64,000 nt of DNA, from contig NW_026262637.1 of assembly GCF_021869535.1 (NCBI RefSeq), positions 31,186,001 through 31,250,000 on the forward strand. Direction: 5' to 3'. The stretch comes from Mytilus californianus. Lineage: Eukaryota. A program made the position numbers and the translations under genes. Of this stretch, positions 433 to 33,564 are shown one piece after another (the first letter of the stretch is position 1; each line of letters opens with the position of its first letter). The notes under the pieces were generated by a model that saw nothing but the letters and a program-made list of their open reading frames with translations, had not been told where the DNA came from and did not search any database.

Positions 433-508
433 ATGACGTCTGGCAAGGCTATTTTGATTTTTTTCTTGGACGCCTTCCTGCGACCAAAATAGCCTTGCCA
501 GACGTCAT
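433..508. repeat. 24-bp perfect inverted repeat (hairpin) inside the TIR
   Basis: ATGACGTCTGGCAAGGCTATTTTG (433-456) and CAAAATAGCCTTGCCAGACGTCAT (485-508), with a 28-nt spacer. Mirrored at ~33121-33196. Confidence 0.9.
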
Positions 509-5385: not shown

Positions 5386-5626
5386 CATGATGATGTGAAG
5401 AATTAGATAAAAATAAAATTCTGGGTTTTTTATTTTCACTGGTACATGTAGATTATTGTACACTGACCCTGTACTTGTCCATGTTAAGATGATGTAATAC
5501 ATGTTAAATTATATTTGTGAAGTCAAAATTACTTTAAATGTATAACATACATGTACATTTGAATACATTGTATGAGACAACAAACCTTTACAAAATGTGA
5601 AATAAAAAGAACAATACAAAACATAC

Positions 5627-8883: not shown

Positions 8884-9125
8884 TCATGCCAGTCCAAAGC
8901 CTGGTGAGTTTGCAATTCCAAAAGTCATGTGTTTTCTGAATGTATTAAAATCTACTGAAACTGGAAGCTTCAACTCCATTGAGCATGTGTTTGCTTTTGG
9001 AAACAATCCTGAGTCATGAAGAAAAGTAATAGATGGTGATGGATCAAATCCTAATGGAGGTACACAGTCTGCTCCAGTTGCAAATGATAAAACATCACCT
9101 AAGGTAATTTCACCATCCTCATCTT
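8884..9125 (-). CDS. HECT C-lobe terminal exon with catalytic cysteine
   Basis: LGDVLSFATGADCVPPLGF...FPKANTC...ANSPGFGLA*. The acceptor TTTCAG ends at 9126. Confidence 0.9.
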
Positions 9126-10083
9126 CTGAAATAAGACAAATAAAAAAAAATTTATACAAAATGTTGACTTCAGTTGAGGTTTACTCATGTTTATACAAAC
9201 CAGGTAAGTAATTGAATGACCAAAACCAACAGCCAAGCTGGTAGTAGATCAATCACAGGGAATGTCCATATAGTCATAATTATACAAAAATCAAAGAGGA
9301 TAACTGATTCATTAAATGTTATGTAACAAAGTTGAACTTGAGTTGGCTATAAAAGCTAAACAACCTCACTCAATAAACTTTCATATTACTACATGAACAA
9401 TATTTTTTATGCTTCACATCTCAATGAGGTCACAATATGAAATAAAACAAAGTCTGTCTTTACATGGTTTATTATATCACTGGTCCCTAATTTTTTTAAA
9501 GATAAAAACAATGACAAGAATGTGTCCAAAGTACAGGGATGCCCTACTCGCATTATCATTTTCCTTGTTCAATGGACTGTGAAATTGGTGAAGTTTCAAA
9601 GTTGAAGGCACATAATTTCAGTCAAATCAGCAGAGCAGAAAGAATGGTATACTTTTATCTGCAAATTTTTGAAAAAAAGTTGGGATGGACTGTGGACCAG
9701 TCAAAAACATCATTTCCTTCGCAACTTGGTTGCCTTCGGTATAATAACATGCATTGTGAGATACACCCAGTCCCCCATGCAACATTCAGAGCAAGTGATA
9801 TTACGTGTGCACATCTTCATAAAATGTCCCTCTGTATTGCACTGACTGGATGCAAGGAGTTGCAGCTATAGTGATTTTTACTTTTACTTAACAAAATTTT
9901 AATTGCAATTATGACAGCATTGGCTGACCTAGAAGTCACGGCCACACAAGACTTTAAATCTCGCAATTTGAAGGGGTAAATTAATAAACTGCTTTGCTGA
10001 GCACAGCTGGATATGCTCTCAGAGGTCCAACCCTGAATAGTTGGGGCAAAAATGGACACAATATTAAAGCTTGATACCGGTCT

Positions 10084-10667
10084 AAAGGAGTAGGTCCAGT
10101 AAGGGCCGATTTTGGCCTCAAATTTCAGGTTCTTCTAACGAAAGATTTTAGACACTTTTTAAACACTGAAGTGTCTATTTCAATTGATTCAATTAGTTTA
10201 TGTGACATATTTTAACTGATGTAGTCATTAAAAACGCTTCGATTCAAGCTAAAATATGAAAAATCTATCAAATATGCCAGGAAACGTCACTTTTCGGATG
10301 GTTTTTGTCAAAAATGAAAGTTGCCGCATCCGTGTTCATCCTCAACCTTTATATATGTTATGTATTATCATCAAATAGAACTTACATTTCAATATTATGA
10401 ATGAACACGAATGCGGCCACTTTCATTTAAGATGGAAACCATCTAAAATCTAACCAAAATGCTAAAATTGTGAAGATTTCAGTAATTTAGCATGACTTCA
10501 TGATGCTAGTTCCCGATATATGTGCATTGTATTGTCAAAAACAGTCCATATTTATGTAGCAGAAGCATTCTACTTTCCAATAAATAGCTAACAGATTACA
10601 TTTTCAAAATTTTGTAAAACTGCTATATTTTGGGGCCAAAAAGGGGTCTTATTGAACCTACTCCTTT
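10084..10667. mobile_element. MITE, Kolobok-like termini
   Basis: TIRs AAGGAGTAGGTCCAGTAAG / CTTATTGAACCTACTCCTT, nested in a family B fragment. The TTAA-type target is degenerate, so the superfamily call is tentative. Confidence 0.6.
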
Positions 10668-11530
10668 GGATTGTATAGAATATTTGACATAAAGGTTTCT
10701 GAATAAATGTAGTCAAAGAACTTGAAATCTGTTATAAAAATTGAATTTATATTCAATTAAAGATTTCTTGCTGTGCTGTTGCTCAATACTTAGTAAATCT
10801 GTTGTCAGACTATAAACAAATAAATTTCAATAATAACTCAATGTTAGATATCAAAAATTTAATAAAAAAAACCTATAGGGAGGTTATCTTTATAGATATA
10901 AATCAGACATCAAAGTTTAATAAAAACTAGAGGCTCTAAAGAGCCTGTGTCGCTCACCTTGGTCTATGTGAATATTAAACAAAGGACGCAGATGGATTCA
11001 TGACAAAATTGCATTTTGGTGATGGTGATGTGTTTGTACATCTTACTTTACTGAACATTCTTGCTGCTTACAATTATCTCTATCTATAATGAACTTGGCC
11101 CAGTAGTTTCAGTGGAAAATGTTAGTAAAAGTTTACAAATTTTATGAAAATTGTTAAAAATTGACTATAAAGGACAGTAAGTCCTTAGGGGGTCAATTGA
11201 CCATGTTGGTCATGTTGCCTTATTTCTAGGTCTTACTTAGCTGTACATTATTGCTGTTTACAGTTTATCTCTATCTATAATAATATTCAAGATTATAACA
11301 AAAAACGGCAAAATTTCCTTAAATGACCAATTCAGGGGCAGCAACCCAACAACCGGTTGTCCAATCCATCTGAAAATTTCAGGGCAGATAGATCTTGACC
11401 TGATTAACAATTTAATCTCTTCAGATTTGCTCTAAATGCTTTGGTTTTTGAGTTATAAGCCAAAAACTGCATTCTACCCCTATTTTCTATAACAATTCTT
11501 ATTATCAATCCAATACTTTCTAAATACTAC

Positions 11531-11706
11531 CTTTTGAACTTCTCCTCTCAAGTCACCATCTGCTATATCTTCAATATTCCTTTCTCCAGCTTGTCCCACT
11601 AACGCATTGTACATAGCTGGAGAAAGGAATTTTGGTGATGGTCCTCTGTGTACAATGGATAGGGAAAAGAATAATCCAACATCTCTGTACAGATTGTCTT
11701 CTAGGG
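11531..11706 (-). CDS. HECT domain internal exon (absent from the ORF track)
   Basis: Translates as ALEDNLYRDVGLFFSLSIVHRGPSPKFLSPAMYNAL...IEDIADGDLRGEVQK, with canonical AG/GT boundaries. Confidence 0.8.
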
Positions 11707-12926
11707 CTACAATAAAACAAAACTAAATATTTTGCTGAAATGTGATAAAAGATTTAAGATATATTAAATTTAACATTTAGAGGCCTTAATAGACATGATA
11801 GATGTCAAAGAATAAATTTTACTATTCATAACTATATATTATCAATCCCTGATTCAGTGATATAATATATATCATGTTTGTTTTGTGTTTCACAGATCTT
11901 CCAGAAATCAGAAGCAAAATGAAGGAAAACAAGAATGTGTCCCTAATACATGGATGCACCATCTGCATTATAATTTTCTGTTTAGTGGACCGTGAAAATG
12001 GGGTAAAAACTCTAATTTGGCATTAACATTTGAAAGATAATATCATAAGGTACAAGTATACTAAGTTTCCTCAACTTCATCAAAAACTAACTCAACCAAA
12101 AACTTTAACCTGAAGCCGGACAGACAGACGAATGAACGGACAGACGGAAGAACAAACGAACGAACAGACCAGAAAACATAATGCCCATAAATGAGGCATA
12201 AAAATGGTCCTTCCCTTTAAAACTGTAACAAGTGTCTAGATCCCCAAAGTGTCCCCTATTGTAAATGGTGTGAGGTTATTGTGAGAGATGGGTCAAGATC
12301 CCTAATGCACCAGCTCTAGATGAGGAACCCCAAGTAATGTGTAAAAGAAATCTCTGTGTATTGATATTGGACATGTTTCTATTTTTTACAAATGATTGAG
12401 CTTAACCATTTGTGGTGATAAGGAAAGTAGAGGGAAATAGAATAAATGTGTAAAAGCTATGGAGCTATTAAAAGTTCAAAGAACTTATTGTGTTAAAACA
12501 GGGATTTTTGACCACAAGGAGCCGCATCACGAAAGAATACTCTGGGTTTGCTAATTTACAGAAAAAGTAATCTCACTTCGTACCCTGAAAATTTAACCAC
12601 AAATAAGAAAATGTCTCAGCTTCAAAACGAGCCATCATATATATCCAAGTTAACGATATGGACTGAGCAACAGAAGAAAACGTTACCATTACGGCCTATG
12701 GAGAAACAATTGCAAACCTTGAACCAGATGATTGATAATTGAACATGACAAAATACCTCTCCATCCCTATAAAGTGGGAGACATAAAAATGTAACTGTAT
12801 AGAGAATACATGAAATTCCTTTTTTAATCTTTCACCAAGATGAGACAATATAATCATCAGTGATATTGTTTGCCTTAAATTAGTGGAGAATAAAGGCTTT
12901 TTCCCCTGGAGAAGAATCCCAATTTG

Positions 12927-14743
12927 AACAAGAGTGCACACGCTGAAATGTCTCGCCTTCTTTACTAATCATTGATATTATGTTGATAGTCCTAAATATA
13001 AAGCTTTATTACAACTGTCACATAAACTTAACATTAACCAAGTAAACTAAACATTGACCAATGAACCATGAAAATGAGGTCAAGGTCAGATGAACCATGC
13101 TAGGCAGGCATGTACAGCTAACAATTCTTCCATACAACAAATAGAGTTGACCTATTGCTTATAGTTTAAGAAAAACAGACCAAATCACAAAAACTTAACA
13201 CTGAGCAATGAACCTTGAAAATGAGGTCAAGGTCAAATAAAACCTGCGTGACTGCCAAATAGATCATAAAATATTTCCATACACCAAATATAGTTGAACT
13301 ATTGCATATAGTATAAGAAAAACAGACCAAAACACAAAAACTTAACTATAACCACTGAACCATGAAAATGAGGTCAAGGTCAGATGACACCTGCCAGTTG
13401 GACATGTACACCTTACAGTCCTTCCATACACCAAATATACTAGACCTATTGCTTATAGTATCTGAGATATGGACTTGACCACCAAAACTTAACCTTGTTC
13501 ATTGATCCATGAAATGAGGTCGAGGTCAAGTGAAAACTGTCTGACGGGCATGAGGACCTTGCAAGGTACGCACATACCAAATATAGTTGAACTATTGCAC
13601 ATAGTATTAGAAAAAAAGACCAAAACTCAAAAACTTAACTTTGACCACTGAACCATGAAAATGAGGTCAAGGTCAGATGACACCTGCCCGCTAGACATGT
13701 ACACCTTACAATCATTCCATACACCAAATATAGTAGACCTATGGCATACAGTATAAGAAAAACAGACCAAAACACAAAAACTTAACTATAACCACTGAAC
13801 CATGAAAATGAGGTCAAGGTCAGATGACACCTGCCAGTTGGACATGTACACCTTACAGTCCTTCCATACACCGAATATACTAGACCTATTGCTTATAGTA
13901 TCTGAGATATGGACTTGACCACCAAAACTTAACCTTGTTCATTGATCCATTAAATGAGGTCGAGGTCAAGTGAAAACTGTCTGACGGGCATGAGGACCTT
14001 GCAAGGTACGCACATACCAAATATAGTTGAACTATTGCACATAGTATTAGAAAAAAAGACCAAAACTCAAAAACTTAAATTTGACCACTGAACCATGAAA
14101 ATGAGGTCAAGGTCAAATGACACCTGCCCGCTAGACATGTACACCTTACAATCATTCCATACACCAAATGTAGTAGACCTATGGCATACAGTATAAGAAA
14201 AACAGACCAAAACACAAAAACTTAACTATAACCACTGAACCATGAAAATGAGGTCAAGGTCAGATGACACCTGCCAGTTGGACATGTACACCTTACAGTC
14301 CTTCCATACACCGAATATACTAGACCTATTGCTTATAGTATCTGAGATATGGACTTGACCACCAAAACTTAACCTTGTTCACTGATCCATGAAATGAGGT
14401 CGAGGTCAAGTGAAAACTGTCTGACGGGCATGAGGACCTTGCAAGGTACGCACATACCAAATATAGTTATCCTATTACTTATAATAAGAGAGAATCTAAC
14501 ATTACAAAAAATCTGAACTTTTTTTTCAAGTAGTCACTGAACCATGAAAATGAGGTCAAGGACATTTGACATGTGACTGACGGAAACTTCGTAACATGAG
14601 GCATCCATATACAAAGTATGAAGCATCCAGACCTTCCACCTTCTAAAATATAAAGCTTTTAAGAAGTTAGCTAACGCCGCCGCCGCCGGATCACTATCCC
14701 TATGTCGAGCTTTCTGCGACAAAAGTCGCAGGCTCGACAAAAA
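12927..14743 (+). mobile_element. HINE/Helentron-associated-like element, family A, with internal satellite array
   Basis: 5' AACAAGAGTGCACACGCTG, subunits arranged in a 440-bp higher-order repeat (13351, 13791, 14231), GCC microsatellite, and 3' hairpin TGTCGAGC..TGCGAC AAAA GTCGCA..GCTCGACA. Confidence 0.75.
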
Positions 14744-15075
14744 ATAATGGCTTAAAATTTTTCCAAAAAGACAATTTTTTTCCCAAACAGTGCTGTCTCA
14801 GTAGAAATGAATGAAGTGCATGAATACAAACTGAAAAACACTCATTTAAACAATTTTCATGCCTAAAATGACTATACTTGCAGATTTGAGGGTCTATTTA
14901 TGTATCATCACTGACAAAATGAGGTCTTATTTTAAAGCAGGGTTTGACATTGAAGTTTCAGTCAAATTCATGGTTAATTTAAATTTCCCAATTTGATGAA
15001 AATGACACATATTTTCCCAATAAAAAAGGGTAGAGGTAGTTTAGAAAAAAGCCAACAATATCACTGGAATCATAC

Positions 15076-15378
15076 CTGATGTACTATAGGCCAAAATTCT
15101 TGTTTTCAGGACCTTCAAAAATGTGCAGGTATTGGATCTTTTTCATCAGCATTCTCAAGAACTCTCTTTTTGGTCCACCTTCATCTATGGCACCTTCTGC
15201 GATTCCTACATCGTCCGTAAACTTCACACTTATCTTGCTTTTAGCACAGAAGGATTTCCTTTTAATGGCACTCCGAGCACCATCTAAAACAAGGTTTCTG
15301 TTGATATTGAATTTCGTTATCTTCTCCAGGTCAACCTGTGACTGTAACTTTATTAATAACTCTGGCAAACTAATATCA
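15076..15378 (-). CDS. HECT domain N-terminal exon (G2E3-like)
   Basis: INRNLVLDGARSAIKRKSF...ISVKFTDDVGIAEGAIDEGGPKREFL matches the HECT N-lobe signature (EGAIDxGGPxREF). Confidence 0.85.
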
Positions 15379-15404
15379 CTAAAATGAACAAAAAATAGTT
15401 GACA

Positions 15405-16630
15405 CAACACAGGTTTCTGACACATAATGAATGTGGTCTAAGAACTTAAACTTAAAAACTTTAAATTTTAAATTGGACATTACCTATTATGGTCCAATAT
15501 CTAAAATCAAAATACATGGTTAGATTCAGCATATCAAAGGACCCCAAGAATTCAATTTTTGAGGAAATCAAATAAAGTTCAATTTTGGACCCTTTAGACC
15601 TCAATGTGGACCAGTTTGATAACCGGGCCCAAACATCAAAAATCTAAATACATGGTTAGATTCAGCATATCAAAGGACCCCAAGAATTCAATTTTTGAGG
15701 AAATCAAATAAAGTTCAATTTTGGACCCTTTAGACCTCAATGTGGACCAGTTTGATAACCGGGCCCAAACATCAAAAATCTAAATACATGGTTAGATTAA
15801 GCATATATCAAAGAACCCCATATATACAATTTTTGTTGAAATCAAACAAAGATTTATTTTGGACCCCAATTTGGACCAACTTGAAAATTTGGCCTATAAT
15901 CAAAAATCTAATACATGTTTAGGTTCAGCATATCAAAGAACCCCAGGGATTCAATTTTTGTTGATATCAAACAAAGTTAAATTTTGGACCACAATTTGGA
16001 CCAACTTGAAAACTGGGCCCATAATAGAAAATCTAAGTACATTTTTAGATTCAGCATATCAAATAACCCCAAGGATTCATTTTTTGTTAAAATCAAACTT
16101 AGTTTAATTTTGGACCCGTTGGACCTTAATGTAGACCAATTTGAAAACGGGACCAAAAATTAAGAATCTACATACACAGTTAGATTCGGCATATCAAAGA
16201 ACCCCAATTATTTAATTTTTGATGAAATCAAACAAAGTTTAATTTTGGACCCTTTGGACCCCTTATTCCTAAACTGTTGGGACCAAAACTCCCAAAGTCA
16301 ATCCCAACCTTCCTTTTGTGGTCATAAACCTTGTGTTTAAATTTCATAGATTTCTATTTACTTATACTAAAGTTATTGTGCGAAAACCAAAATAAATGCT
16401 TATTTGGGCCCCTTTTTGGTCCCTAATTCCTAAACTGTTGGGACCTCAACTCCCAAAATCAATCCCAACCTTCCTTTTGTGGTCATAAACCTTGTGTTCA
16501 AATTTCATTGATTTCTATTTACTTAAACTAAAGTTATAGTGCGAAAATAAAAAAAATGCTTATTTGGGCCCTTTTTAGCCCCTAATTCCTAAACTGTTGG
16601 GACCAAAACTCCCAAAATCAATCCCAATTT
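15405..16630 (+). mobile_element. Repeat family B, 5'-truncated copy with ~120-136-bp internal tandem units
   Basis: Near-perfect 136-bp units starting at 15511, 15647 and 15783. Confidence 0.7.
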
Positions 16631-17346
16631 TAGTGCAATTTAAGTATACATAAATAAACATGAAATCTTCAAATACGTACACATCCATTGGTATGGTTTT
16701 GTCACCTTCATCATCAGAGTCATCAACTGTTACTATTTCAGTTTCAAACAGCTGGACATATGACCTAAGTAATAAATAAATCTTGGTTTGATTAACCTAT
16801 TGTACATTCTGTTTTCCTTTTTACTTAAATGCTATTTTTTATGTCTGTAATGTTTATATGAAGTTAAAGACATTTATGACACAACATATGTTGAAACCTC
16901 CAGGTTGGGTACTTGTCACCAATACGGATATTCAATTGAAAAAATACATGTAAAGTATGCTGGATTTTCGTATCATATCTTTGACAAAAATAAAAATAAT
17001 CAACTATCACTAAGTTTGTCTTGTTCTTAATATTGTCTGAGGGTTCAACTGCAAAACACATGACTTTGCCTGGATGATAATCTACTATCTAGGATGCATG
17101 CAAATACAAGGTTAGATGATTCTACCATGTATAGTTATAACGCTTCACATACACAAATTTTTCTTACGATTGCTTACGAATCTCAAAACTTTACCAGATT
17201 CATAAAACTTTCACAAGCTGCTGATAGGGCTTTAAACCTTAACCAATCGATCAAACCTAAATCTTAAATCAAAATCAAATACATTTGCAAAGTACTGGAA
17301 TATATCCCAAAACAATCAGAAATGTATATTCATATACATCAAGAAA

Positions 17347-17545
17347 GAGGGGGGTAGGAGGGGTCCTGATCCCGAAATCCCGGGCTTAAAAACACGAAAT
17401 CCCGAGGTCCCGAATTTAAATAAAGTTAAATCCCGGATCCCGAAATTTGAAAAAAAGATTTCCCGGATCCCTATGTAGTAAATCCCGAAATCCCGAGCTT
17501 AAAAACACCCGATCCCGGAGTCCCAATAAAGGTCCTATCCCCCTC
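17347..17545. mobile_element. ~200-bp GC-rich mini-element with ATCCCG motif repeats
   Basis: Ends GAGGGGGGTAGGA / TCCTATCCCCCTC, flanked by an AAGAAA direct repeat. Confidence 0.65.
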
Positions 17546-19629
17546 AAGAAAGTATTTATATTTATTCCTAAACTTGTGGCCAACCAATTATAAACTATAC
17601 TCAATCATTTGTAATTGATTCATAAAGCAATCGTATTCAATTACACACAAAAGACTTTTCACCATTCTTTAAGAATAGTGTTTGTGTTGTTACATTAAGT
17701 TAACAATGCTTTACAAATGACTAAGACTGGATGGCGAGCTATTTACGAATGAAGTTATCTAAAAACAATCAGCCATTTGTTGAAAATTATTTGACATGTC
17801 AAATCAGGGATCAGCAGAATGTATAAGAGTTGTTTTAAGAGTTAAATTCCAATGCTTGCTGTGAATGACAAAAAAGTTGTAGATTTGTGAGCATTTATAA
17901 GAAAAAAATTCTGTATGTGAATTGGTATTAATACTAAGAAAGATGTGAACTTGGAAGTAAACTTAAATGTAAGTCAGTCAAGTAAAAAATATAGGTTACA
18001 GTGATTCATTATATCAAGAAATTGTGTCCAGATTATCTACAAATAAAATACCTGTAAGTTGAAGGACATGCTGGAGCATCATTACCAGTAGATGACCGCA
18101 AGCTTAATCGAGATCTACGCTCTCTACGTTCTAAGCACGATGGATGAAATGTTATCTATAAAACAGGGTAATCCGTCTTAAAATTAAACAATTTCAAATT
18201 GTAAAACAATTGCAGAGTATTCTTGGTCAGCACATATAGCATTTCAACTTATCATACATGCATGTTATTTTAATTCATTTTGATTTTTTAACAAATGTAT
18301 ACTGCTTGTCATCTAAATCAGGTTTCACTTTCTAAGACCTGCTGCTCACTATTTACAGATTCAGTTAATACTGCCATTTTTCTGAAATGAAATCTCCCTA
18401 GGCACTTTTGTTTTCTTTTTGACATTTCTTTAATAATAGTTTCGGCAGGCATTGAAATATCTGAATTGTCCATTACTAAAGATTACAGAAACTCAGTTCA
18501 GAACTGATACTGGTAGATTTAAATCAAAATTGATCACCTGTGGCGTAAACAGCTATTTAGAACAAGAGATTGAAATAAATTTGGGGCCTTTCTTTTAATG
18601 CAATAACAAATTTTCAGTGCGGCATTTGTCATGTTGGATGTAAAATGCAAATTTTGCAATAGTGCCTCCTAGAACATGTAGAATACTCTGGAACTAGTTT
18701 AATCAAAGTCCATTGAAATATATTAAATCCAGAGTGCTCACAAGGATGAAACAAACTGAAAATTTTGAAGTTCTGTTTGCCCATGACAATCAATCTATGA
18801 TCTTAAAAAAGCAATCACATTTGAGGTCATGATATGTAATGAGTTTGTTAAAAAGATGCATGACACACATTTCATAATAAAACCTTTTCACATCCATTCT
18901 AATGGAATAGCTAAGTTACATGTAAATACTAACTGTCGGTGTGCCTGTATCTTCCCGATCACCTTCCGGATCACCTTCCACTATATCTTGACTTTGCACA
19001 GTTTTGGTGATGTCTGTTTGTGGTTTCTACAATATTCATAAAACTATATTATCCTAGTTCAATAAATTCCTTCAGGATTATTATCCTACAGGAGTGTGTC
19101 AAAAATACACACCAGAAACATACACTTCAAAATACTGAAGTAATATTTAGCACTAAATTCATAGAATACTGCAAATAATAATTTATTAGTTTAAACATAT
19201 TTATTTATACTGGATTGGGAAACAAGTTTTTCATCTTATATTAATCCCTTTCCACTTTGCAGGTGCTAGTGCTGCTTGTAGCGGCATTACCCTGCTCTTT
19301 TTTTCGAAATCTACAAGGGTGTCCTTTACATGCAAGAGATATGACTCTCTCTTAACACTAATTTAATTTATTGCATACAACATGTACAAAGAGCTGTTCG
19401 GGAAGTAGTTTCATTGTGTACACTTAAAACTTATAGCACATCATGGAATGCTGTTTGCAATTGGATTTACATTAAACATTAACACTGTCATTGAAGCAAA
19501 TGCTATTTTTTCTTTCCCTTTCCTAGACATCCCCCCCTCATAATTTTAATGCAAAGGTGTCATTTTTCTTCTGAAAAGTGTTAATATGGTAAATGTCACA
19601 ACCATAAACAAACTAAAAAATCATTTTTA

Positions 19630-21100
19630 ATAAAATGCTCCGCAGGGCGCAGCTTGATACGACTGCAGAGGTCGAACCCTGAACAGTTGGGGCAAGTATG
19701 GACACAACATTCAAGCTTGATACAGCTCTGAATTTGGATTGTGATTAAATATTTGACACAGCATAGGTTTCTGACACAGAATGAATGTGGTCTAAGAACT
19801 TAAAAATTTTAAATTGGACATTCACCTATTATGGTCCAATATCCAAAATCTAAATACATGGTTAGATTCAGCATATCAAAGAACCCCAAGAATTCAATTT
19901 TTGATGAAATCAAACAAAGTTTAATTTTGGACCCTTTTGACCTCAATGTGGACAAAGTTGATAACGGGGCCCAAAAATCAAAAATCTAAATACATGGTTA
20001 GATTCAGCATATCAAAGAACCCCATATATTCAATTTTTGTTGAAATCAAACAAAGTTTAATTTTGGACCCCGATTTGGACCAACTTGAAAACTGGGCCCA
20101 TAATCAAAAATCTAAATACATGTTTAGATTCAGCATATCAAAGAACCCTAAAAATTCAATTTTTGTTAAAATCAAACTAAGTTTAATTTTGGACCCTTTG
20201 GACCTTAATGTCAGTCAGGGGTACTACTTGTACAAGTAATTTTTATTTACTTGAAGAAGTAAATAAAATATACTTATACAAGTTAATTATATTGTTTGAA
20301 TAATCTCCCCTTAATTTTCTAAAAAATTTACTTGTATAAGTAAATTTTTTTTACAATCCCACAAAAATTCTCAAGTTTTGAGATGTAAAATCATGCCTTT
20401 AACAATTTTTCTCAGGTTAGCTCATAATTTTTAATAAGAGTTCAATGTTTCATCTCATTAATTCAACACAGAAACTGATTGAGCAAAGATCTTAAGTATT
20501 TGCGCAAGGCCTTCAAAAATTGCTCCTTGGGGGCTTGTAAATGAGCAGTGTTCTAAAGATAAAAGACAAATGAGATTTTCATTGTCCATGAAATTACACT
20601 TAAATGAATAGTAAAGACATCTGCAAAGGACAGACAATTCAAAATTCTGTTAGAGCAAAGAAGTTCTAAGAATTCAAGAAAAGAAGATAGGATGACTTTT
20701 TTACTTGTATAAGTAAAAAAATCTGAATGCCTAAGGGACATAACTAGGCCAAAAAATAATTTACTTATACAAGTAAATAAAATACACTTGTATAAGTATC
20801 CTACAAATTTACTTATATAAGTATATTATAATTACTTCTTCAAGTAAATAAAAATTACTTGTACAAGTAGTACCCCTGACTGAATGTAGACCAATTTGAA
20901 AACGGAAACAAAAATTAAGAATCTAAATACACGGTTAGACTCGGCATATCAAAGAACCCCAATAATTCAATTTTTGATGAAATCAAACAAAGTTAAATTT
21001 TGGACCCTTTGGACCTCAATGTGGACCAATTTAAAAATAGGGCCCAAAATCCAAAAACTTAATACACGGTTAGATTCAGCATATTAAAGAACCCCAAGAA
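19630..21100 (+). mobile_element. Repeat family B copy interrupted by a MITE
   Basis: 5' AATGCTCCGCAGGGCGCAGC. The unit GACCTTAATGTAGACC is split by the insertion at 20212-20882. Confidence 0.75.
20212..20882. mobile_element. MITE with CAGTCAGGGGTACTACT termini and 5-bp TSD (AATGT)
   Basis: Long imperfect TIRs. AATGT at 20207-20211 and 20883-20887. Confidence 0.9.
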
Positions 21101-21164
21101 TTCAAGAATAAAACCCCATTGAAATTGATCAAGAAATAAGCAATTTATACGAAGTATCTTCTTC

Positions 21165-21385
21165 TGCACAATACTGTGCAATTGAATATTTCTTGCTATT
21201 GCGCAATACTGTACAATTGACAATTTCTTGCTATTGCGCAATATTGTGCTATTGGATATTTCTTGCTAATGCGCAATACTGTGCAATTGAAGATTTCTTG
21301 CTATTGCGCAATACTGTGCAATTGAAGATTTCTTGTTATTGTGCAATACTGTGCAATTGAAAATTTCTTGCTATTGCACAATACT
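21165..21385. repeat. 35-bp tandem repeat, ~6 units
   Basis: CAATACTGTGCAATTGAAGATTTCTTGCTATTGCG recurs at 21169, 21204, 21239, 21274, 21309, 21344 and 21379. Confidence 0.9.
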
Positions 21386-21509
21386 TATTATATAATAATT
21401 TACACATCCTGTTTGGTGTGTATCTCCTACCATATCATTATTATTTGCTTTTAAATATTAATCAGAAATAACCAACTTAAAATGAAAAATTTTAAAAGAA
21501 AAAAAAAAG

Positions 21510-22215
21510 AAAAAAAAAAATCCCCCCTCCCAAATTTTTTGAACCCCCTTATGATTCATCACCCCCAAACTCAATACCAGCCTTCCCTTTGTGGTATGGT
21601 ACCTTGCAGTACAATTTCAGAGAGATCCATACACTTGAACACAAGTTATTGTCTGGAAACTAGAAAAATGCTTATTTTTGGCCCCTTATTCCTAAACGTT
21701 TCGGGCAATTACCCCCAAACTCAATTCCAGCTTTCCCTTTGTGATATGGAACCTTGTAGTACAATTTCAGAAATATCCAAACACTTACACACAAGTTATT
21801 GTCATGAAACTAGAAAAATGCTTGTTTTTTGCCCCTTTTTTGGCCCCTAATTCCTAAAATTTTGAGGCAATTACCCCCAAAATCAATTACAGCCTTCCCT
21901 TTGTGATATGGAACCTTGTGGTACAATGTCAGAGAGATCCATACACTTACACACAAGTTATTGTCTGGAAGTTACAAAAATGCTTATTTTTGGCCCCTTT
22001 TTGGCCCCTAATTCCTTAACTGTTGGTACCATAACCCCCAAAATCAATCCAAACCTTCCTTACGTGGTATTGAACCATATGGTAAAATTTCATGGAGATC
22101 CATTCGCTTAAACTAAAGTTAGAGTGCGAAAACCAATGTGTCTTCGGACGACGATGACGACGCCAACGTCATACCAATATACGACCAAAAATTTTAATTT
22201 TTGCGGTCGTATAAA
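21510..22215 (+). mobile_element. Non-autonomous repeat with ~180-bp internal units (CCTTCCCTTTGTG...GAACCTTG)
   Basis: Three similar units and a 3' end (GACGACGCCAACGTCATACCAATATACGACC...GGTCGTATAAA) related to family B ends. Confidence 0.55.
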
Positions 22216-24190
22216 AATGCATGAATTTAGCTAACAAAGTGTGGTCATGAAAATGAACGTCAGCGAGTCGATCGATCTATATAAAAAAAAAATTGTTGTA
22301 GGGGCAAAAGATATAAAATTTATTTCATGAAAAGCTTAACGTTAACATCATCATGATGATCCATTTATCTGAATGTGTCACAAGATTGCTATTTAGTGTT
22401 ACATGCACAATTGTTAATTACAAACTAGACTGTACTGTCTTCAAGGGAACCTGTATGTCGCCTGCATTTTATTCATAGCATTGCACACATTATTTATGTC
22501 CACAGTCCACTATGTGTAATTTCAAAGTTTTTGATAAACAGGATGTAGTTGAGTGACAGCAATGAAAAACAATTCTAAAGGATAAAGCATAGAGATGCAA
22601 AATATCAAATGTCTGTACTGCATGTAGTTGTAGAGAAAACTGCAATGAAATTTTGCATACATATTTGACGAGCATGCCTTAAATATCAAAGTTTTTGGTA
22701 TTAAATAGGAAGTACATAAGCAAAGCCATGAAAATGCTTTACGCGTCATAGTACTTCGAGATAAAGCATTCTCCAAAATATTAAGTCTGCTGCATGTAGT
22801 TGATAAGAAAACTGCAATGAAAATGTGTGACAACATTGCGGTGCATATGCGGCAAAGGTCTTGGAAAGATGGATTTTGTCAAAGTGACCCCTATATAAAA
22901 CACAGGCGACATAAAAATATATTATATGTATCAGTATATACATGAAGTGCACTTGGATAAGAATATTAATCTATAGGTACATAGAGTGAGTATGATAGTA
23001 TTACCAAGCATTTCATACCTGTTGTGTGTCGAGTACGAATACAATTTTCTGCCACTGTACAAATATTGTTTTTATCCTGTATTTATAAAATGTACAAATT
23101 ATTTTTTCATACCAACAGAATAACAGAAAGACATTCTTAAAAAAATGATTCCATATGAACACATCATATAGGAAAGCATGAATCATGTAAAATTAAAATG
23201 GGTCAAAGACAGAAAGGGCCAGTTTTTGTTAAACAAGAAGAAGAGCTACAAACCTCACTCTGAAATCACATCTCATTGATGTGAGAGCCCATACAGAAGC
23301 TGCATACCAAATATGAAGAGCCTGTGATTTTTAGTTCCTGAGATAAATATTAAAAATACAGTATTTCCCTGCGACCAACATTCACATATTATAATTAAGC
23401 TGATTTTTCAACTCGCAAAATCCAGCCAAAAATCATTAATCTAACTTGAAGGTAAAAGACCATCATCCTACATGTAGCAAGAGCAGAAACATCACCTTCA
23501 TGTGATCTATCCACATGCAAAATAATAAAAGCCTATCACAAATTTTAGGTACATGCTAGACATGATTTTGTTTTGAGTGGCAGCTGACGACTGATTACTA
23601 TAGTGTGACCACCACTAAGAAACATTGTTTTATTTATTGTCGATTAAAACTACATGTGTAATATCCTGTGTTCTATGGTTTTGAGCTCTAAAAAGTTATG
23701 ATGCTGCATAATTACCTGTAAAGAGTGTGTCTTGCCGAATACTGGAAGTTCCTCGTCTGTCATGTCTGTGTCATCTAATTTGTTTTGATCCATCATGTCC
23801 ATATCATTTTCGAACTAAAAATGAATTCATACTTGTAAAACAACTATCAATATTTTTGCAGTAAGATACTATATCACTAATTAGAAAACTTTTTATGTGT
23901 GTTAACGAACATTGCAAAAAATCTGCACCCATCCCCCCTAAAAGAAGAACATTACATTAAATTATATTTCTTTCCTTTAAATGGATATTGCAACTCCCTC
24001 AAGACTCATTATACAGTTTGATGTTATTAATTCTTTAATAAATATTTTGCGGCCCATATTTTGTCATACAACTAAAAGTAGGTGTTTTACTGTTTACTTT
24101 CTCAGGTAACATTTAACTTTGTGATCAATGCTTATGTGTAGTTGTCCTTCATGTATAGTTATACAATATTAAACTGTATTTGTCATATAA

Positions 24191-24889
24191 CAGTCAGGGG
24201 TACTACTTAAACAAGTGATTTCATTATCACCTATTTCAGTGATTTTTTAAATTCAGTTATCACCTATTTAAGTGATTTTGGTGCTTCCTTTGATCTTCAA
24301 ATGCTAATTTCATTGATTTTCCATATTTTCACAAACTTTTCTATAATTTTCCTATATAGATCAATTATCCCTTTATCTTTGGATATCAATTTCACTAGTG
24401 CGCTTGGCCAGTAAGTTAGTGCGCTAAAGCTTTTAAAAGTACCCTTGGGAATTGTTCTGTAATCAAATATTCATTAACTACTCTTACTATCAGACAAAGG
24501 TCAACAATATTAGGTAACCTGATTGGTTTTCTTTATAGTTAGAATGACTTATTTCAAGGTTATGTCCTGATCTACAAATTATTCCAGTTTTTGCATATTT
24601 AAATAAACTGTAAAAACTGACAGGCTTATCAAGCAAAAGACAATTTCTGCATGTACATAGTTGTCTTTTCAATTGAATTCTTGTCTTTTTACCAATAAAA
24701 AAATCAAGCTTATGGGAAAAATATCAAAAAAATGTTATAAACACTTATTGAAGTGATTACATTTTAACTTCTCAAATTACTTGTTTCAGTGATTTTAAAA
24801 AGTCTGTGCGAAAATTTTTAATATTTCACAGACAAAATCACAAAAAGAAGTGATTCTGAAATCACTTGTTTAAGTAGTACCCCTGACTG
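24191..24889. mobile_element. Second MITE with CAGTCAGGGGTACTACT termini and 5-bp TSD (TATAA)
   Basis: Same terminal 17 bp but a different interior. TATAA at 24186-24190 and 24890-24894. Confidence 0.9.
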
Positions 24890-26746
24890 TATAAGTAACA
24901 TTATACTTTTAACATAAACAAAAATAACAACAACAATAAAATAACTGAGTGGAACACACACATATCTATATATACACAAGTAAAACTAACTAAGAGTTCC
25001 CTGTCCTCAGTTCTTAAAAGACTGTTGTTAAAAACATAATAAAGGAACCTGTTTTTTCTGACACTTGGTTTATATTTGACGGATTTAGTAGGACTACTAG
25101 TTTTTCAGTATCAGATAGATTTGGAAACATAGGATTATCTATTGCCATGTCATTAAAAGGTTTTATACGTAAAGCATTATTAATTTGACAGTGGAGGAGA
25201 AAGTGATTTTCATCTTCTAAGGTTTTACAAGTTGGACACGACGTAACGTTCTATTGTTTTGAGGTATGTTTAGATTATCTGCCCTTCAATGATCAAATTA
25301 TGGTAACTAATTCTAACTTTTTGTAAATAAACGTCTAGTTTGTTTCAAAAATTTGGATGAAGATAAAATTTTTGGTCTTGTTTGACTTTAATATTTTTGA
25401 ATGAAAGAAAAAGTTTGTTATTTTCATTTAAACTGTTCATGTTATTTTCCAGTAATTCTGAATTAAAGTTGCATGTAATATTCTTAATCAAAGTCTGTAG
25501 TTTTTCACTTGTTCCATATTTTGACAGGACACTATTTTTTGTATATCAATATTCATTTCTTGTGTTGAATCTACCAGAATTTTTCTAATTCCATTTTTTT
25601 GGAAAATATTGTACAATGAATGATAAAATACAATGTACACACCTCAGGGCCCTCGACGAGAACATATAGCTTCCCTTGACCAATCAGAGCCTTCAGCCCT
25701 ATTCCATCAAATTTGAATGTTGATGGTTCATTTGGTTTGGATAATTTTTTATGGGAGCACGATAAAAAATTGATCTTGGTGGGATCTTTGTCAGTACTGT
25801 CAAATATGTCAAGTAGTTTGTTTTTAATAGTGTCCTCTGTATCCTCCGAACTTATGTTAATTAATCCTTCTTCTAGGATAATATCTGCACACAGAATGCC
25901 TGGCAATTTTATATTTCCAATAAAAACAACTTTATATGACTTTTCAAATAACTTCTTCTTCTTCTTCATTTGTTGTCTGATGTCTTTTCTGGAGGCAGCT
26001 CCCTGTATTGGTGAGAAATGTGTCCTTGGGTGTGAAGTGGCTTTTGACGACTTAAACACAGAAGCAATCTGCTGAGCCCATCCACTTGTACTTGGCCTGT
26101 TGCCAATGATATCTCTTGCTTGTCCTATATTAAGTAAATATTATTATAGTAAAATTAAAAAGATAAAATTAAAGCAGTTGGCGATTATCATGACAAAATT
26201 TTAAACTAAACAATTATTTGGAAAGATATTACTTCAGGTAAATGTATCACAACTTAAAGACACGGTATCATACCATAATTTTTCAACACATTTTTTGGCG
26301 GTCATGTACTCGTCTAAAAGTACTGAAGTTAATTAGGTATCAAAAATCCTTTCACCCTTTTTATCATCTGTTTCACCCCTTATTTTCCAAAACAGTATTG
26401 GGTAGAAAGCTCAAAATCACTCACAGTCATAGTATAGTACTCAGATATCTTATTTTCAAAGTTCCTAAAGAACAATCAACTAATACTTTTAAATCATTCG
26501 ATAGTATTGCAAAAACAATTCAGAGAATTTGCTCAAAAGATATAGGTTTAAAAAGAGCCTGTTCGAGACATAATTCATTGAACTTTTTTTTCATCAATCT
26601 GCAACAAAAGTGGGCAACTGATCTTTGCCAAGCTATTAGGTTTTTTGTTGAGTTTCATCAATACAAAGAGCTCAGCACCTGTACATGCTGTAGTTTTGTT
26701 GTACAAAAAAATAATTGATTTTTCTACCAACCATGAATGTACATAC

Positions 26747-26993
26747 CAGCACGTTCTGCTGTTGTTACAACAATATATCTTCTTGTTCCCCAACCTCCAT
26801 CTGGAGAAGAAAACCCTCTTGTATCAGCTGCAACGGCTTTCAACACCCCTCCTACATGGTACCTCAAACCCACTGCTGAAGGAAACTGTGATTTGAGTGT
26901 CTCCCTCTCCAAAACATCTTCTTTAAGTGGCAATAAGACCTCAGCATCATAACAAAGTTCACTATGTGAAACCTTTATATGACCTGACATCAT
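26747..26993 (-). CDS. First coding exon: TDP-43 N-terminal (ubiquitin/DIX-like) domain
   Basis: TLKSQFPSAVGLRY...SSPDGGWGTRRYIV parallels human TDP-43 TVTAQFPGACGLRY...HAPDAGWGNLVYVV. Acceptor at 27002-27001, donor at 26746-26745. Confidence 0.8.
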
Positions 26994-32268: not shown

Positions 32269-33414
32269 CCTAGTCAGTGCTAACAAGTTGGAAACGACAA
32301 ATTTTCAATCATATAAAGGGCAATTTCTCCTTGAAATAAAAGTGAATCTGGCTGAAATTCGAAATTGTCCTATGAGAGGCTATGAATATATATATAGCTC
32401 TCATTATGTGTATAAATATGAACAAAATATGCTGACAAATAAAAGTTCTAGAGAGCTAAGAATTCCTGAAGAAAAATATGTTTTGAAATATGCAAAGACA
32501 TATAGTAATTATTAACCACAGTGGGATGTGGAAAAAAAATCTACTTCAGGGATTCAGAGATGGGAACTAGAACACATTCCAATTTTTCCATAAACGGCCA
32601 TTGTGGTGCATATTTCGGCACTTTTTTACATTGGTTATTAGATGTACCGCAACTCTTTCCAACAAGTGTTTCCATCTGATGAACCTGCTGTCAATTTCCA
32701 GTTCTGGTTTACGGATTTTTTATAAACAAAGCGAGTACTTTGTGGCAAATAAACCAAGATTTCTATAGAAAATCCACAGCCTTCAATACAGAGATTTTTG
32801 TTATAAAATTTCAAACATAGATTACTCACTTGCTTTTCTAAAATGTGCTTGTGTTTATTAATTGTTTACAAAAAAATATAAGCAACCTGTAAATTCCCAA
32901 ACATCTGGTGCTGAGCCAGTCAAGTGCACCCTAAAAGGTGTACTTAATTTGAGCTAAATTCTTATTTGTTTTAACCATTATTATAACTAAAGTAATAAAC
33001 TTGTTTTGAGAAAATTTCAATGCTCGCAATAATCCTATATCTATCAGTCATTAAATTGCCTTATTTGAGGGAACAAGGATAAATAGAAAAGGCTGTGGAT
33101 GTTCTAGTCTAAATAATATTATGACGTCTGGCAAGGCTATTTTGGTCGCAGGAAGGCGTCCAAGAAAAAAATCAAAATAGCCTTGCCAGACGTCATAATT
33201 ATTTGGACTATGGATTTTCTATAAACTTTCCATATGTTTAGTATTGAATCAACACAAGGGTACATAATCCTAACAGTAACACTAACAGTAACAGCCTGCA
33301 ATGCCGGACTCGCATGAACGCAAGATTTAGTTAGTGGGGCGACGCGTTTTTTTAATTCTTGGTCATGCATTCGTGTTGAGAAAGAAAGGGGGGAATGCAA
33401 ACAGTTACACAAAG

Positions 33415-33546
33415 CGTTACCTTCTCATATATCTATCAACAGCTAATCAAACGTACAACTTCAACATGTGAGTCAAGCAGGGGCTGCCATTTTCGACTAT
33501 ATCGACCAATCACAAACGTTGTTGCAAATTTGACCTTGTGACGTCA
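33415..33546 (-). promoter_or_regulatory. Mirror copy of the putative promoter/first-exon donor in the right TIR
   Basis: Same motif cluster on the minus strand, pointing toward the TDP-43N-HECT gene. Confidence 0.45.
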
Positions 33547-33564
33547 AACAATTTCCCATAATGC

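What the first reader, a model, noticed from the sequence alone, without database searches (positions are those of the whole stretch)
8884..26993. TDP-43 N-terminal domain fused to a HECT E3 ligase inside a transposon
Seen: the first coding exon carries the QFPxAxGLRY...PDxGWG...Y signature and splices in phase through six further exons into a HECT domain. No RRMs are present. Established: the TDP-43 NTD is a ubiquitin/DIX-like fold that oligomerises head-to-tail, and TDP-43 has been implicated in restraining transposable elements. Inference: the element may encode an effector that co-assembles with host TDP-43 and ubiquitinates it (anti-silencing), or it may use the NTD to self-polymerise the ligase. 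I do not recognise this architecture as a described host gene.
Basis: partly seen in the sequence, partly recalled or inferred. Interest (0 to 1): 0.9.

Follow-up and report, generated by a model that had tools for sequence, protein, structure and literature searches.

The report
Transposon-borne TDP-43-like HECT ligase, decayed copy
This stretch of a California mussel chromosome is a 34-kb "cut-and-paste" transposon that carries, besides its integrase, a ubiquitin-ligase gene with a TDP-43-like front domain. Both genes are broken in this copy, but intact copies exist in a sister mussel, and similar transposon-plus-ligase pairs occur in scallops and corals.

Summary
The domain calls are right. 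Exon 1 (26993-26747, minus strand) is a TDP-43_N domain by profile, by sequence match to solved structures and by predicted fold. The last exon is the HECT C-lobe with its catalytic Cys. No RRMs are present.

The window is Mytilus californianus. Its gene copy is broken: a 2-bp deletion in exon 8 gives a stop after 467 aa, and three exons are missing, two of them HECT exons. Intact 758-aa TDP43N-HECT genes exist at seven or more loci in M. trossulus. Spliced, intron-free contigs join exon 1 to all the HECT exons.

"Inside a transposon" is also right. The element is 34,409 bp long, with 1,657-bp inverted terminal repeats. Its termini read TATGG..CCATA and it is flanked by a 6-bp duplication, AATGAT. 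These are the published IS3EU/GingerRoot hallmarks. Its DD35E integrase is frameshifted here.

The same tail-to-tail HECT-integrase pair occurs in scallop and in an 8.6-kb coral element, where the front domain is SAM. So the ligase is a long-term companion gene of this transposon lineage.

The TDP-43-targeting idea is weakly supported, because 7 of 9 TDP-43 polymerisation-interface residues are changed. I found no paper linking IS3EU to HECT.

The parts
1..1266 (.). Inner 1,266 bp of the left terminal inverted repeat. The outer 390 bp and the left TSD lie just left of the window (L005 5723-6119).
   Evidence: The reverse complement of 32362-34018 matches at 99.2% over 1,660 alignment columns. 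The left terminus TATGG is at L005 5729, which is window position -390.
3882..5153 (+). Integrase-type transposase ORF of 424 aa. The catalytic core is complete but the C-terminus is lost.
   Evidence: Pfam rva_4 (PF24764) scores E 1.8e-82, with a weak rve hit and an HTH-like stretch at residues 200-237. D246, D303 and E338 (DD35E spacing) are invariant in 12 relatives. It is 97% identical to the 515-aa M. trossulus protein P0088.
5131..5397 (+). Displaced C-terminal 89 codons of the integrase, in another reading frame and with one internal stop.
   Evidence: tblastn of P0088 residues 427-515 matches here. A 1-bp length difference in an A9 run at 5133-5141, relative to the intact M. trossulus ORF, is shared with the second M. 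californianus copy L004.
8884..9125 (-). Exon 12 relic: HECT C-lobe with the catalytic Cys (motif ANTC) and Phe at -4, plus the stop codon at 8884-8886.
   Evidence: Pfam HECT scores E 7e-9, covering profile positions 233-305 of 306. The AG acceptor is at 9127-9126. The Cys is invariant in 23 homologues.
11531..11706 (-). Exon 9 relic (HECT N-lobe). It is out of frame in this copy.
   Evidence: tblastn of P0027 residues 489-548 gives 95% identity. AG/GT boundaries and a phase mismatch are shown.
15076..15378 (-). Exon 8 (start of the HECT N-lobe). It carries a 2-bp deletion between 15102 and 15101 and the resulting stop at 15086-15084.
   Evidence: DNA alignment A1 against two M. trossulus copies shows the deletion, which L004 shares. 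Translation stops at residue 468.
16681..16764 (-). Exon 7 (acidic linker).
   Evidence: tblastn of P0027.
18052..18155 (-). Exon 6.
18934..19026 (-). Exon 5. Exon 4 of the M. trossulus gene has no counterpart in the window.
23019..23076 (-). 58-nt cassette exon '3b'. When included, it shifts the frame and splits the mRNA into a 307-aa ORF and a 473-aa ORF.
   Evidence: It is present in the spliced contigs L007 and L009. Its length in M. trossulus is exactly 58 nt. It has AG/GT sites in the window. The products are P0023 and P0057.
23716..23814 (-). Exon 3.
25643..26124 (-). Exon 2: disordered basic linker plus a second, ubiquitin-like (beta-grasp) domain.
   Evidence: tblastn gives 97.5% identity. 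The AF2 topology is beta-beta-alpha-beta-beta-alpha-beta at residues 143-239, with only moderate pLDDT. Foldseek finds tandem-UBL hits such as USP7 and ISG15.
26747..26993 (-). Coding part of exon 1: the TDP-43_N domain. The 5' UTR continues unspliced to at least 27187.
   Evidence: Transcript L007 positions 1-442 align to window 27187-26746.
32362..34018 (.). Right terminal inverted repeat (1,657 bp), ending in CCATA. About 20 copies of a 21-bp subterminal repeat lie at 33565-33989.
   Evidence: The same terminus abuts unrelated flanks in L001, L002 and L004. In L018 and L020 homology to the window ends within 2 bp of the same point.
34019..34024 (.). Right copy of the 6-bp target-site duplication AATGAT. 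The left copy is at L005 5723-5728.
   Evidence: Read directly from the sequence.

Best explanation
Shown: the region is a decayed copy of a large IS3EU/GingerRoot-type cut-and-paste DNA transposon. The element spans window positions -390 to 34018 (34,409 bp) in Mytilus californianus. Intact members of its family carry two genes arranged tail to tail. One is a DD35E integrase-like transposase. The other is a 12-exon gene for a 758-aa protein made of a TDP-43_N domain, a ubiquitin-like domain, a disordered acidic linker and a complete HECT ubiquitin-ligase domain. In this copy both genes are broken, so it can only move, if at all, with proteins supplied by other copies.

Inferred: the HECT ligase is a companion gene that this transposon lineage has kept for a long time, not a chance passenger. 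It most likely works for the element by ubiquitinating proteins at or near the element. My best guess is host factors that restrain the element (about 0.4). The next most likely target is the transposase complex or repair factors after integration (about 0.25). On this view the variable front modules (TDP-43_N, SAM, UBX/UBL-like) act as self-association or adaptor pieces that concentrate or dock the ligase. They would not act as a specific hook for TDP-43.
For: Identity. The window equals JAKFGE010000015.1 of assembly GCA_021869535.1 at 100%.

Element.
- The TIRs are 1,657 bp long and 99.2% identical.
- The termini read TATGG..CCATA and the TSD is AATGAT.
- These match the published IS3EU/GingerRoot hallmarks: 'TA..TA termini, TSDs usually 6 bp' (PMC10045372) and 'TAYGG..CCRTA' (PMC12730594).
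- The same terminus abuts unrelated flanks in three other loci of two species, and homology ends at the same point in two more.
- M. trossulus copies on different chromosomes are 99.9% identical over 20-31 kb.

Genes.
- The integrase scores rva_4 E 1.8e-82 with an invariant DD35E.
- P0027 has TDP-43_N plus HECT.
- The HECT profile matches AREL1, WWP1 and NEDD4 at E 1e-22.
- The AF2 model has pLDDT 85-97 over residues 390-755, and the top 50 Foldseek hits are all HECT domains.
- The catalytic Cys is invariant and the -4 Phe nearly invariant in 23 homologues from bivalves, corals, fish, a hemichordate, a sponge and a beetle.

One transcription unit. Spliced contigs from at least 8 sequencing runs join exon 1 to all HECT exons.

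Linkage.
- Argopecten locus L021 has the HECT gene on the plus strand and an integrase 3-4 kb downstream on the minus strand.
- An 8.6-kb coral element has termini TACGG..CCGTA, TSD CAAAAA, and a SAM-HECT gene facing an integrase.
- All 4 metagenome contigs with a full HECT and at least 2 kb of downstream sequence have the integrase in the same position.
- Pairwise identities of HECT and integrase from the same loci rise and fall together (Spearman 0.72).

Precedents. Fungal IS3EU elements carry TET/JBP genes, which the authors propose help the elements escape methylation-based silencing. Ginger1, MULE and Helitron elements encode OTU/Ulp1 proteases, and those authors suggested that the ubiquitin pathway takes part in transposition (PMC2836005).
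Against: - No function was tested. Ligase activity, substrates and any effect on transposition are all inferred.
- Only one clean TSD was seen per element family (this locus, and coral locus L025). No empty site was examined.
- The assembled M. trossulus transcripts mostly contain the frame-breaking cassette exon. The 758-aa fusion protein therefore rests on RefSeq models, not on an assembled contig.
- The correlation between HECT and integrase identities uses non-independent pairs, and could simply reflect host phylogeny.
- Argopecten locus L006 has no integrase within 10 kb, so some copies are solo.
- Placement among Repbase IS3EU transposases could not be done.
- The integrase frameshift lies in an A9 homopolymer and could in principle be an assembly error.
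Confidence: 0.7

Rival explanations
1. The TDP-43_N domain co-polymerises with host TDP-43, and the HECT domain ubiquitinates it, which relieves TDP-43-dependent restraint of transposons.
For: The fold and family match to the TDP-43 NTD are genuine. That domain polymerises head to tail (PMC5491494). The coral relative carries SAM, another head-to-tail polymeriser, so 'co-polymerise with a host polymer' could be a general strategy. Variable front modules would fit an arms race with host factors.
Against: Seven of the nine interface residues are not conserved. The acidic tail E14/E17/E21 becomes A/L/K, and R55 becomes A. Mutating either charged face alone abolishes TDP-43 polymerisation. Identity to human TDP-43 NTD is only about 30%, so there is no sign of recent capture or mimicry. 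The Argopecten domain lacks the GGWG motif. TDP-43_N also occurs in unrelated non-TDP-43 proteins, so the domain does not imply TDP-43 biology. I could not retrieve the Mytilus TDP-43 sequence.
Confidence: 0.1
2. The ligase serves transposition mechanics. It would ubiquitinate the integrase or the strand-transfer complex, or repair factors, so that p97 or the proteasome can clear the site and the gaps can be repaired.
For: The ligase is tightly and persistently paired with the integrase. The front parts contain UBX (P0045) and ubiquitin-like modules. From general knowledge, such modules dock to p97 and the proteasome. Bao et al. proposed that ubiquitin and SUMO enzymes of transposons act in post-transposition repair.
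Against: A conserved substrate such as the element's own integrase would predict a conserved recognition module, but the N-terminal modules differ between lineages. The many IS3EU families described in the papers I read are not reported to carry such a gene. There is no experimental evidence.
Confidence: 0.25
3. The TDP43N-HECT gene is an ordinary host gene, or a recently captured passenger with no role for the element. On this view the 34-kb unit spread by segmental duplication.
For: GingerRoot elements are known to pick up host gene fragments (PMC6839031). The gene has 12 exons with long, repeat-filled introns, like a host gene. One Argopecten locus lacks a nearby integrase.
Against: The TIRs, the TAYGG..CCRTA termini and the 6-bp TSD define a transposon, not a duplication. 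The same gene order and orientation occur in mussels, a scallop and a coral, at 29-61% integrase identity. At least seven near-identical full-length loci lie on different M. trossulus chromosomes. The catalytic residues are invariant.
Confidence: 0.07

Closest known systems
[quoted passage not shown] 2019, PMC6839031; Kojima and Bao 2023, PMC10045372)
   Same: The transposase is integrase-like (DD35E) with an HTH-like N-terminus and no zinc finger. The termini are TA..TA, here TATGG..CCATA. The TSD is 6 bp. The superfamily is reported from oysters, corals and fish.
   Different: This element is very large (34.4 kb) with 1.66-kb TIRs. It carries a second, multi-exon gene for a HECT ligase. None of the three papers I searched mentions HECT or ubiquitin, and no paper in the library holds both 'IS3EU' and 'HECT'.
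Fungal TET/JBP-carrying IS3EU elements (PMC12730594)
   Same: These are IS3EU elements with TAYGG..CCRTA ends and 6-bp TSDs. They carry accessory enzyme genes that the authors think help the element escape host silencing.
   Different: The accessory genes there are a dioxygenase and an alpha-kinase, in fungi. Here the accessory gene is a ubiquitin ligase, in animals.
Vertebrate G2E3 and the RefSeq 'G2/M phase-specific E3 ubiquitin-protein ligase-like' proteins
   Same: Among the named relatives listed, nearly all outside Mytilus (fish, corals, Saccoglossus, a sponge) carry this RefSeq name. They are 33-45% identical to the mussel HECT over about 370 aa.
   Different: There are no PHD/RING-type fingers. 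The front part is TDP-43_N plus a UBL-like domain instead. True orthology to G2E3 was not tested. Marin 2010 dates the G2E3 subfamily to after the chordate/echinoderm split.
TDP-43 (TARDBP) N-terminal domain
   Same: Same Pfam family and same fold.
   Different: There are no RRMs and no glycine-rich tail. The polymerisation interface is not conserved.
Ginger1, MULE and Helitron elements encoding OTU/Ulp1 proteases (PMC2836005)
   Same: They are DNA transposons that encode a ubiquitin- or SUMO-system enzyme.
   Different: Those enzymes remove ubiquitin or SUMO and are usually fused to the transposase. Here the enzyme adds ubiquitin and is encoded by a separate gene.

Membership tests
IS3EU/GingerRoot DNA transposon | DDE (DD35E) integrase-like transposase without an HHCC zinc finger | tested here: met
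   rva_4 scores E 1.8e-82. No zinc-finger family appears among the Pfam hits. D246, D303 and E338 are invariant.
IS3EU/GingerRoot DNA transposon | TA..TA termini (TAYGG..CCRTA) with terminal inverted repeats | tested here: met
   TATGG..CCATA, with 1,657-bp TIRs. The coral relative has TACGG..CCGTA.
IS3EU/GingerRoot DNA transposon | 6-bp target-site duplication | tested here: met
   AATGAT on both sides of this copy and CAAAAA in coral locus L025. Only one clean case was seen per family.
IS3EU/GingerRoot DNA transposon | Transposase clusters with Repbase IS3EU/GingerRoot sequences in a phylogeny | not testable with these tools
   No Repbase or GingerRoot reference proteins were available. Homologues come from taxa named in the GingerRoot paper or related to them (oysters, a soft coral, carp).
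IS3EU/GingerRoot DNA transposon | Autonomous copy (intact transposase) | tested here: not met
   A frameshift in the A-run at 5133-5141 removes the C-terminal ~86 aa. The ORF is intact in M. trossulus locus L018.
HECT E3 ubiquitin ligase | Full bilobed HECT domain (profile and fold) | tested here: met
   This holds for the intact relative P0027. Pfam HECT scores 54 bits against a cut-off of 23.9, covering profile positions 12-305 of 306. The PDB profile search gives E 1e-22. AF2 plus Foldseek support the fold.
HECT E3 ubiquitin ligase | Catalytic Cys in the C-lobe and Phe at position -4 | tested here: met
   The Cys (P0027 C726) is invariant and F755 nearly invariant. Both are present in the window's last exon.
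HECT E3 ubiquitin ligase | Complete, translatable domain in this window's copy | tested here: not met
   A stop follows residue 467, and exons 10 and 11 are missing.
HECT E3 ubiquitin ligase | Thioester formation and ubiquitin transfer | not testable with these tools
   This needs a biochemical assay.
TDP-43_N domain family (PF18694) | Profile match above the curated threshold, and the fold | tested here: met
   47.1 bits against a cut-off of 27.1. Target TM-scores are 0.84-0.88 to 5mdi and 6t4b.
TDP-43_N domain family (PF18694) | Conserved charged head-to-tail polymerisation interface | tested here: not met
   Only 2 of 9 positions are kept or conservatively replaced.
TDP-43 (TARDBP) orthologue | Two RRMs and a glycine-rich C-terminal region after the NTD | tested here: not met
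   No RRM hit in P0019 or P0027.
G2E3 subfamily of HECT ligases | N-terminal PHD/RING-like zinc fingers | tested here: not met
   The only Pfam hits in P0027 are TDP-43_N and HECT.
G2E3 subfamily of HECT ligases | HECT domain groups with bona fide G2E3 in a phylogeny | not tested
   Only RefSeq 'G2E3-like' names are available for the relatives. No verified G2E3 sequence was at hand.
Maverick/Polinton | Protein-primed DNA polymerase, capsid, ATPase and protease genes alongside an rve integrase | tested here: not met
   Within the element, the only ORF longer than 190 codons is the integrase. tblastx against the scallop locus finds clear conserved coding sequence only in the integrase and the HECT-gene exons.

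The most novel reading that the evidence does not exclude
A whole lineage of animal IS3EU transposons, from corals to bivalves and probably fish, encodes its own HECT ubiquitin ligase as a host-manipulating factor. The ligase would be brought to its site of action by swappable polymerising or ubiquitin-like front domains. It would tag host silencing, chromatin or repair proteins for removal. The many 'G2E3-like' genes of fish and invertebrates would then be transposon genes, and vertebrate G2E3 itself may be a domesticated descendant.
Probability: 0.25. Interest if true: 0.85.

Novelty: new variant of a known kind. Interest (0 to 1): 0.63.

Why it matters
Transposons are known to carry enzymes that remove ubiquitin or SUMO, and in fungi enzymes that erase DNA methylation. 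A transposon lineage that keeps its own ubiquitin-adding HECT ligase across animal phyla does not appear in the papers I could search.

If the ligase acts for the element, it would be a transposon counterpart of viral E3 ligases that disarm host defences. It would also open a tractable way to find which host proteins restrain DNA transposons in marine invertebrates.

There is a practical consequence for annotation as well. Many RefSeq 'G2/M phase-specific E3 ubiquitin-protein ligase-like' genes may be transposon genes. That would inflate counts of HECT family size and of 'gene family expansion'.

Finally, the result shows that the TDP-43 N-terminal fold is a reusable module outside TDP-43.

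Tried and rejected
Linkage in fish is therefore untested.
The 8-sequence alignment A4 worked.
- A single-sequence phmmer search of the HECT region against the PDB found nothing. A profile search was needed.
Its presence in the coral and fish proteins is therefore unproven.
- Argopecten locus L006 has no integrase within 10 kb.
- Inverted-repeat searches in the short metagenome contigs gave only truncated repeat arrays and no clean termini.
- Coral loci L026 and L027 did not show matching 6-bp flanks.
- Maverick/Polinton was considered because of the long TIRs, the 6-bp TSD and the rve-type integrase. I rejected it because no other virus-like genes are present.
- Ginger1 and Ginger2 were rejected because their TSDs are 4-5 bp and Ginger1 has an HHCC finger.
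- An assembly-artefact explanation for the 100% identical inverted repeat seen inside the window was rejected. The arms extend to a defined terminus shared with five other loci, and they differ at 0.8% over their full length.
- The full-length AF2 run modelled the N-terminal domain poorly because the short fragments in its alignment were badly placed. The dedicated N-terminal run is the one to trust.

Full report
**What the window is.** The window matches Mytilus californianus assembly GCA_021869535.1, scaffold JAKFGE010000015.1, at 100% (L003 equals window 36993-5084). A second fetched locus, L005, overlaps the window start and extends 6,119 bp to its left. The DNA is AT-rich animal sequence with no N runs.

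**The observation.**
- The ORF at 26727-26999 on the minus strand hits Pfam TDP-43_N at E 2.2e-12 and 47.1 bits, against a cut-off of 27.1.
- In a phmmer search of the PDB, TDP-43 N-terminal-domain chains are the only significant matches, best E 3e-5, over residues 1-75.
- An AlphaFold2 model of residues 1-245 has pLDDT of about 90 for residues 20-70. Its best Foldseek matches are the TDP-43 NTD crystal structures 5mdi and 6t4b, with target TM-scores of 0.84-0.88, rmsd 1.2-1.3 A and 28-30% identity.
- The last exon hits Pfam HECT at E 7e-9 and contains the catalytic Cys and the Phe at position -4.
- No RRM is found in the annotated product or in its intact relative.

The domain calls are therefore correct and far beyond chance.

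**The gene model.** RefSeq annotates this locus as XP_052089159.1, 467 aa, 'uncharacterized' (P0019). A 758-aa relative in M. trossulus (P0027, XP_063445700.1) has both TDP-43_N (residues 17-76) and a full HECT domain (residues 471-757). I mapped P0027 and a spliced transcript onto M. trossulus locus L002. This gives 12 coding exons of 247, 482, 99, 63, 81, 104, 84, 305, 176, 173, 221 and 239 nt.

The window keeps nine of these exons, all with AG/GT borders. It has three defects:
- a 2-bp deletion in exon 8, between 15102 and 15101, which creates a stop at 15086-15084;
- no exon 4;
- no exons 10 and 11, because about 6 kb of M. trossulus sequence is replaced here by about 1.5 kb.

Exon 9 is consequently out of frame. 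The second M. californianus copy, L004 on scaffold 2, shares all three defects. The statement that the exons splice in phase into a HECT domain is therefore true of the gene family but not of this copy.

**One transcription unit.** Thirteen intron-free contigs from runs SRR13891784-816 carry the HECT ORF. In the eight shown it is preceded by an upstream ORF; the only one of these with a Pfam result on record (L007) is TDP-43_N. L007 and L009 map to L002 at 99.4-100% identity and contain every exon from the 5' UTR to the 3' UTR. I take these contigs to be mRNA. That is an inference from their lack of introns and their recurrence across runs.

All the contigs that reach this far upstream include an extra 58-nt cassette exon (window 23076-23019). 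It shifts the frame and splits the message into a 307-aa TDP43N-only ORF and a 473-aa HECT ORF. The uninterrupted 758-aa product therefore rests on RefSeq models that skip this exon.

**The transposon.**
- The inverted repeat seen inside the window (1-1266 against 32362-33628) extends to a defined end. L005 positions 5729-7385 are the reverse complement of window 34018-32362, giving 1,657 bp at 99.2% identity.
- The element begins with TATGG, ends with CCATA, and is flanked on both sides by AATGAT. It is 34,409 bp long.
- The same terminus abuts unrelated flanks in a second M. californianus locus and two M. trossulus loci, and homology ends at the same point in two further M. trossulus loci.
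- M. trossulus locus L018 also shows part of the second arm.
- M. trossulus copies on different chromosomes are 99.87-99.94% identical over 20-31 kb, which points to very recent spread.
- The outer ~450 bp of each arm holds about 20 copies of a 21-bp repeat.
- Published descriptions of IS3EU/GingerRoot state 'TA..TA termini, TSDs usually 6 bp' (PMC10045372) and 'TAYGG..CCRTA' ends (PMC12730594). This element fits both.

**The integrase.** The ORF at 3882-5153 hits Pfam rva_4 at E 1.8e-82. It has an invariant D-57-D-35-E triad and thousands of relatives in bivalves, corals, fish and fungi. In both M. californianus copies, a 1-bp length change in an A9 run (5133-5141) displaces the last ~86 residues. 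The M. trossulus ORF is intact.

**Is the ligase a companion gene or a passenger?**
- Scallop: in Argopecten irradians locus L021, a 762-aa TDP43N-HECT gene on the plus strand is followed 3-4 kb downstream by an rva_4 integrase on the minus strand. This is the same tail-to-tail layout as in Mytilus. The Argopecten protein in this cluster that was scored (P0031) is 35% identical to the Mytilus one.
- Coral: in Tara coral-associated contigs, an 8.6-kb element has ~550-bp TIRs, termini TACGG..CCGTA and TSD CAAAAA. It contains a HECT gene facing an rva_4 integrase. The RefSeq version in Porites lutea is an 876-aa SAM-plus-HECT protein.
- Metagenomes: a pattern scan returned 43 HECT loci. Seven have an integrase, always downstream and on the opposite strand. 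These seven include all four loci that have a full HECT and at least 2 kb of downstream sequence.
- Co-variation: HECT and integrase identities from the same loci co-vary (Spearman 0.72), with the caveat that the pairs are not independent.
- Content: tblastx between the mussel element and the scallop locus finds clear conserved coding sequence only in these two genes.

The ligase gene has therefore travelled with this integrase across deep divergences.

**The ligase itself.**
- A profile of 23 homologues matches solved HECT domains (AREL1, WWP1, NEDD4, ITCH, E6AP) at E down to 1e-22, across both lobes.
- The AlphaFold2 model of P0027 has pLDDT 85-97 over residues 390-755, and its top 50 Foldseek hits are all HECT domains.
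- The catalytic Cys is invariant and the -4 Phe nearly invariant.
- Residues 243-360 are predicted to be disordered.
- Residues 143-239 have a beta-grasp topology at moderate confidence. They attract tandem ubiquitin-like hits such as the USP7 UBLs and ISG15.
- Nearly all the named relatives listed are RefSeq 'G2/M phase-specific E3 ubiquitin-protein ligase-like' proteins of fish, corals, Saccoglossus and a sponge, at 33-45% identity. Only the bivalve ones carry TDP-43_N.

**The TDP-43 hypothesis.** Afroz et al. 2017 define the polymerisation interface. The acidic tail is E14, E17, E21 and Q34. The basic head is N45, S48, R52, R55 and N76. They show that E17A/E21A or R52A/R55A abolish polymerisation. 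In the alignment these positions read A, L, K, Q and gap, G, K, A, V in the mussel domain. The domain is only about 30% identical to human TDP-43 NTD.

Related elements use SAM or UBX in its place. TDP-43_N also occurs in unrelated settings. Examples are three tandem copies in a Meloidogyne protein, a stand-alone domain in a choanoflagellate, and a fusion to CCHC zinc knuckles. Specific targeting of host TDP-43 is therefore not supported, although it is not excluded. I could not retrieve the Mytilus TDP-43 sequence for comparison.

**Mechanism.**
- Shown: the anatomy, the mobility signatures, the conserved pairing and the conservation of catalytic residues.
- Inferred: the ligase works for the element. 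I favour action on host proteins that restrain the element (about 0.4), because the catalytic domain is conserved while the front modules are swapped between lineages. The precedent is the accessory genes of fungal IS3EU elements, which their authors propose help those elements escape methylation-based silencing.
- Main rival: clearing the transposase complex or recruiting repair (about 0.25). This is in line with Bao et al.'s suggestion for transposon-encoded OTU/Ulp1 enzymes.

**Novelty and limits.** No paper in the searchable library holds both 'IS3EU' and 'HECT'. The GingerRoot paper, the IS481EU paper's IS3EU passages and the fungal IS3EU paper do not mention a ligase. The library is incomplete, and Repbase entries could not be read. 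Function is untested. The fish loci could not be examined. The copy in this window is dead.

Noticed in passing
window 37279-45761 (+); also L005 2840-2858: This is a STAND NTPase plus TPR gene. The P-loop exon at 38763-38990 gives weak NB-ARC and NACHT hits, and TPR repeats lie in 41156-42958. The RefSeq model (1,264 aa, nSTAND1) has a small piece to the left of the transposon, so the element may sit in its first intron.
   Followed up: partly
window 47832-55848 (-): These are exons of a sodium:solute symporter (SSF, choline-transporter-like) gene. Its 559-aa RefSeq model spans all of L003 and L005. The transposon and the STAND gene would therefore lie inside one of its introns, unless the model is over-extended.
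   Followed up: partly
window 12925-14482, 28482-29624, 5977-6441: Arrays of a 147-bp satellite-like repeat lie inside the element. One array sits in the intron after exon 8, is absent from the second M. californianus copy L004 and has no match in the M. trossulus loci compared.
   Followed up: no
window 8157-8714, 15463-16627, 19805-22159: Families of 136-bp and 161-bp interspersed or tandem repeats fill the introns of the ligase gene. They account for much of the element's size compared with the 8.6-kb coral relative.
   Followed up: no
window 23019-23076 (-): A 58-nt frame-shifting cassette exon is included in all assembled M. trossulus transcripts that cover it. It would yield a TDP43N-only 307-aa protein and may act as a regulatory 'poison' exon.
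   Followed up: partly
window 33565-33989 (mirrored in the left arm): About 20 copies of a 21-bp subterminal repeat lie in each TIR. They are candidate transposase-binding sites.
   Followed up: no
proteins P0005, P0006, P0008, P0003, P0009: The TDP-43_N domain occurs outside TDP-43 in several settings: three tandem copies in Meloidogyne graminicola, a stand-alone 83-aa protein in the choanoflagellate Salpingoeca punica, a fusion to five CCHC zinc knuckles, and tandem pairs in a cricket protein and a metagenome protein.
   Followed up: partly
window 43604-43863 and 31576-32115: A 28-bp tandem repeat (about 9 copies) lies within the span of the STAND gene. A 185-bp tandem repeat (2.9 copies) lies just inside the right TIR.
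   Followed up: no
L004 12027-19272: The second M. californianus copy carries an extra ~7.2-kb insertion between exons 2 and 3, relative to the window.
   Followed up: no
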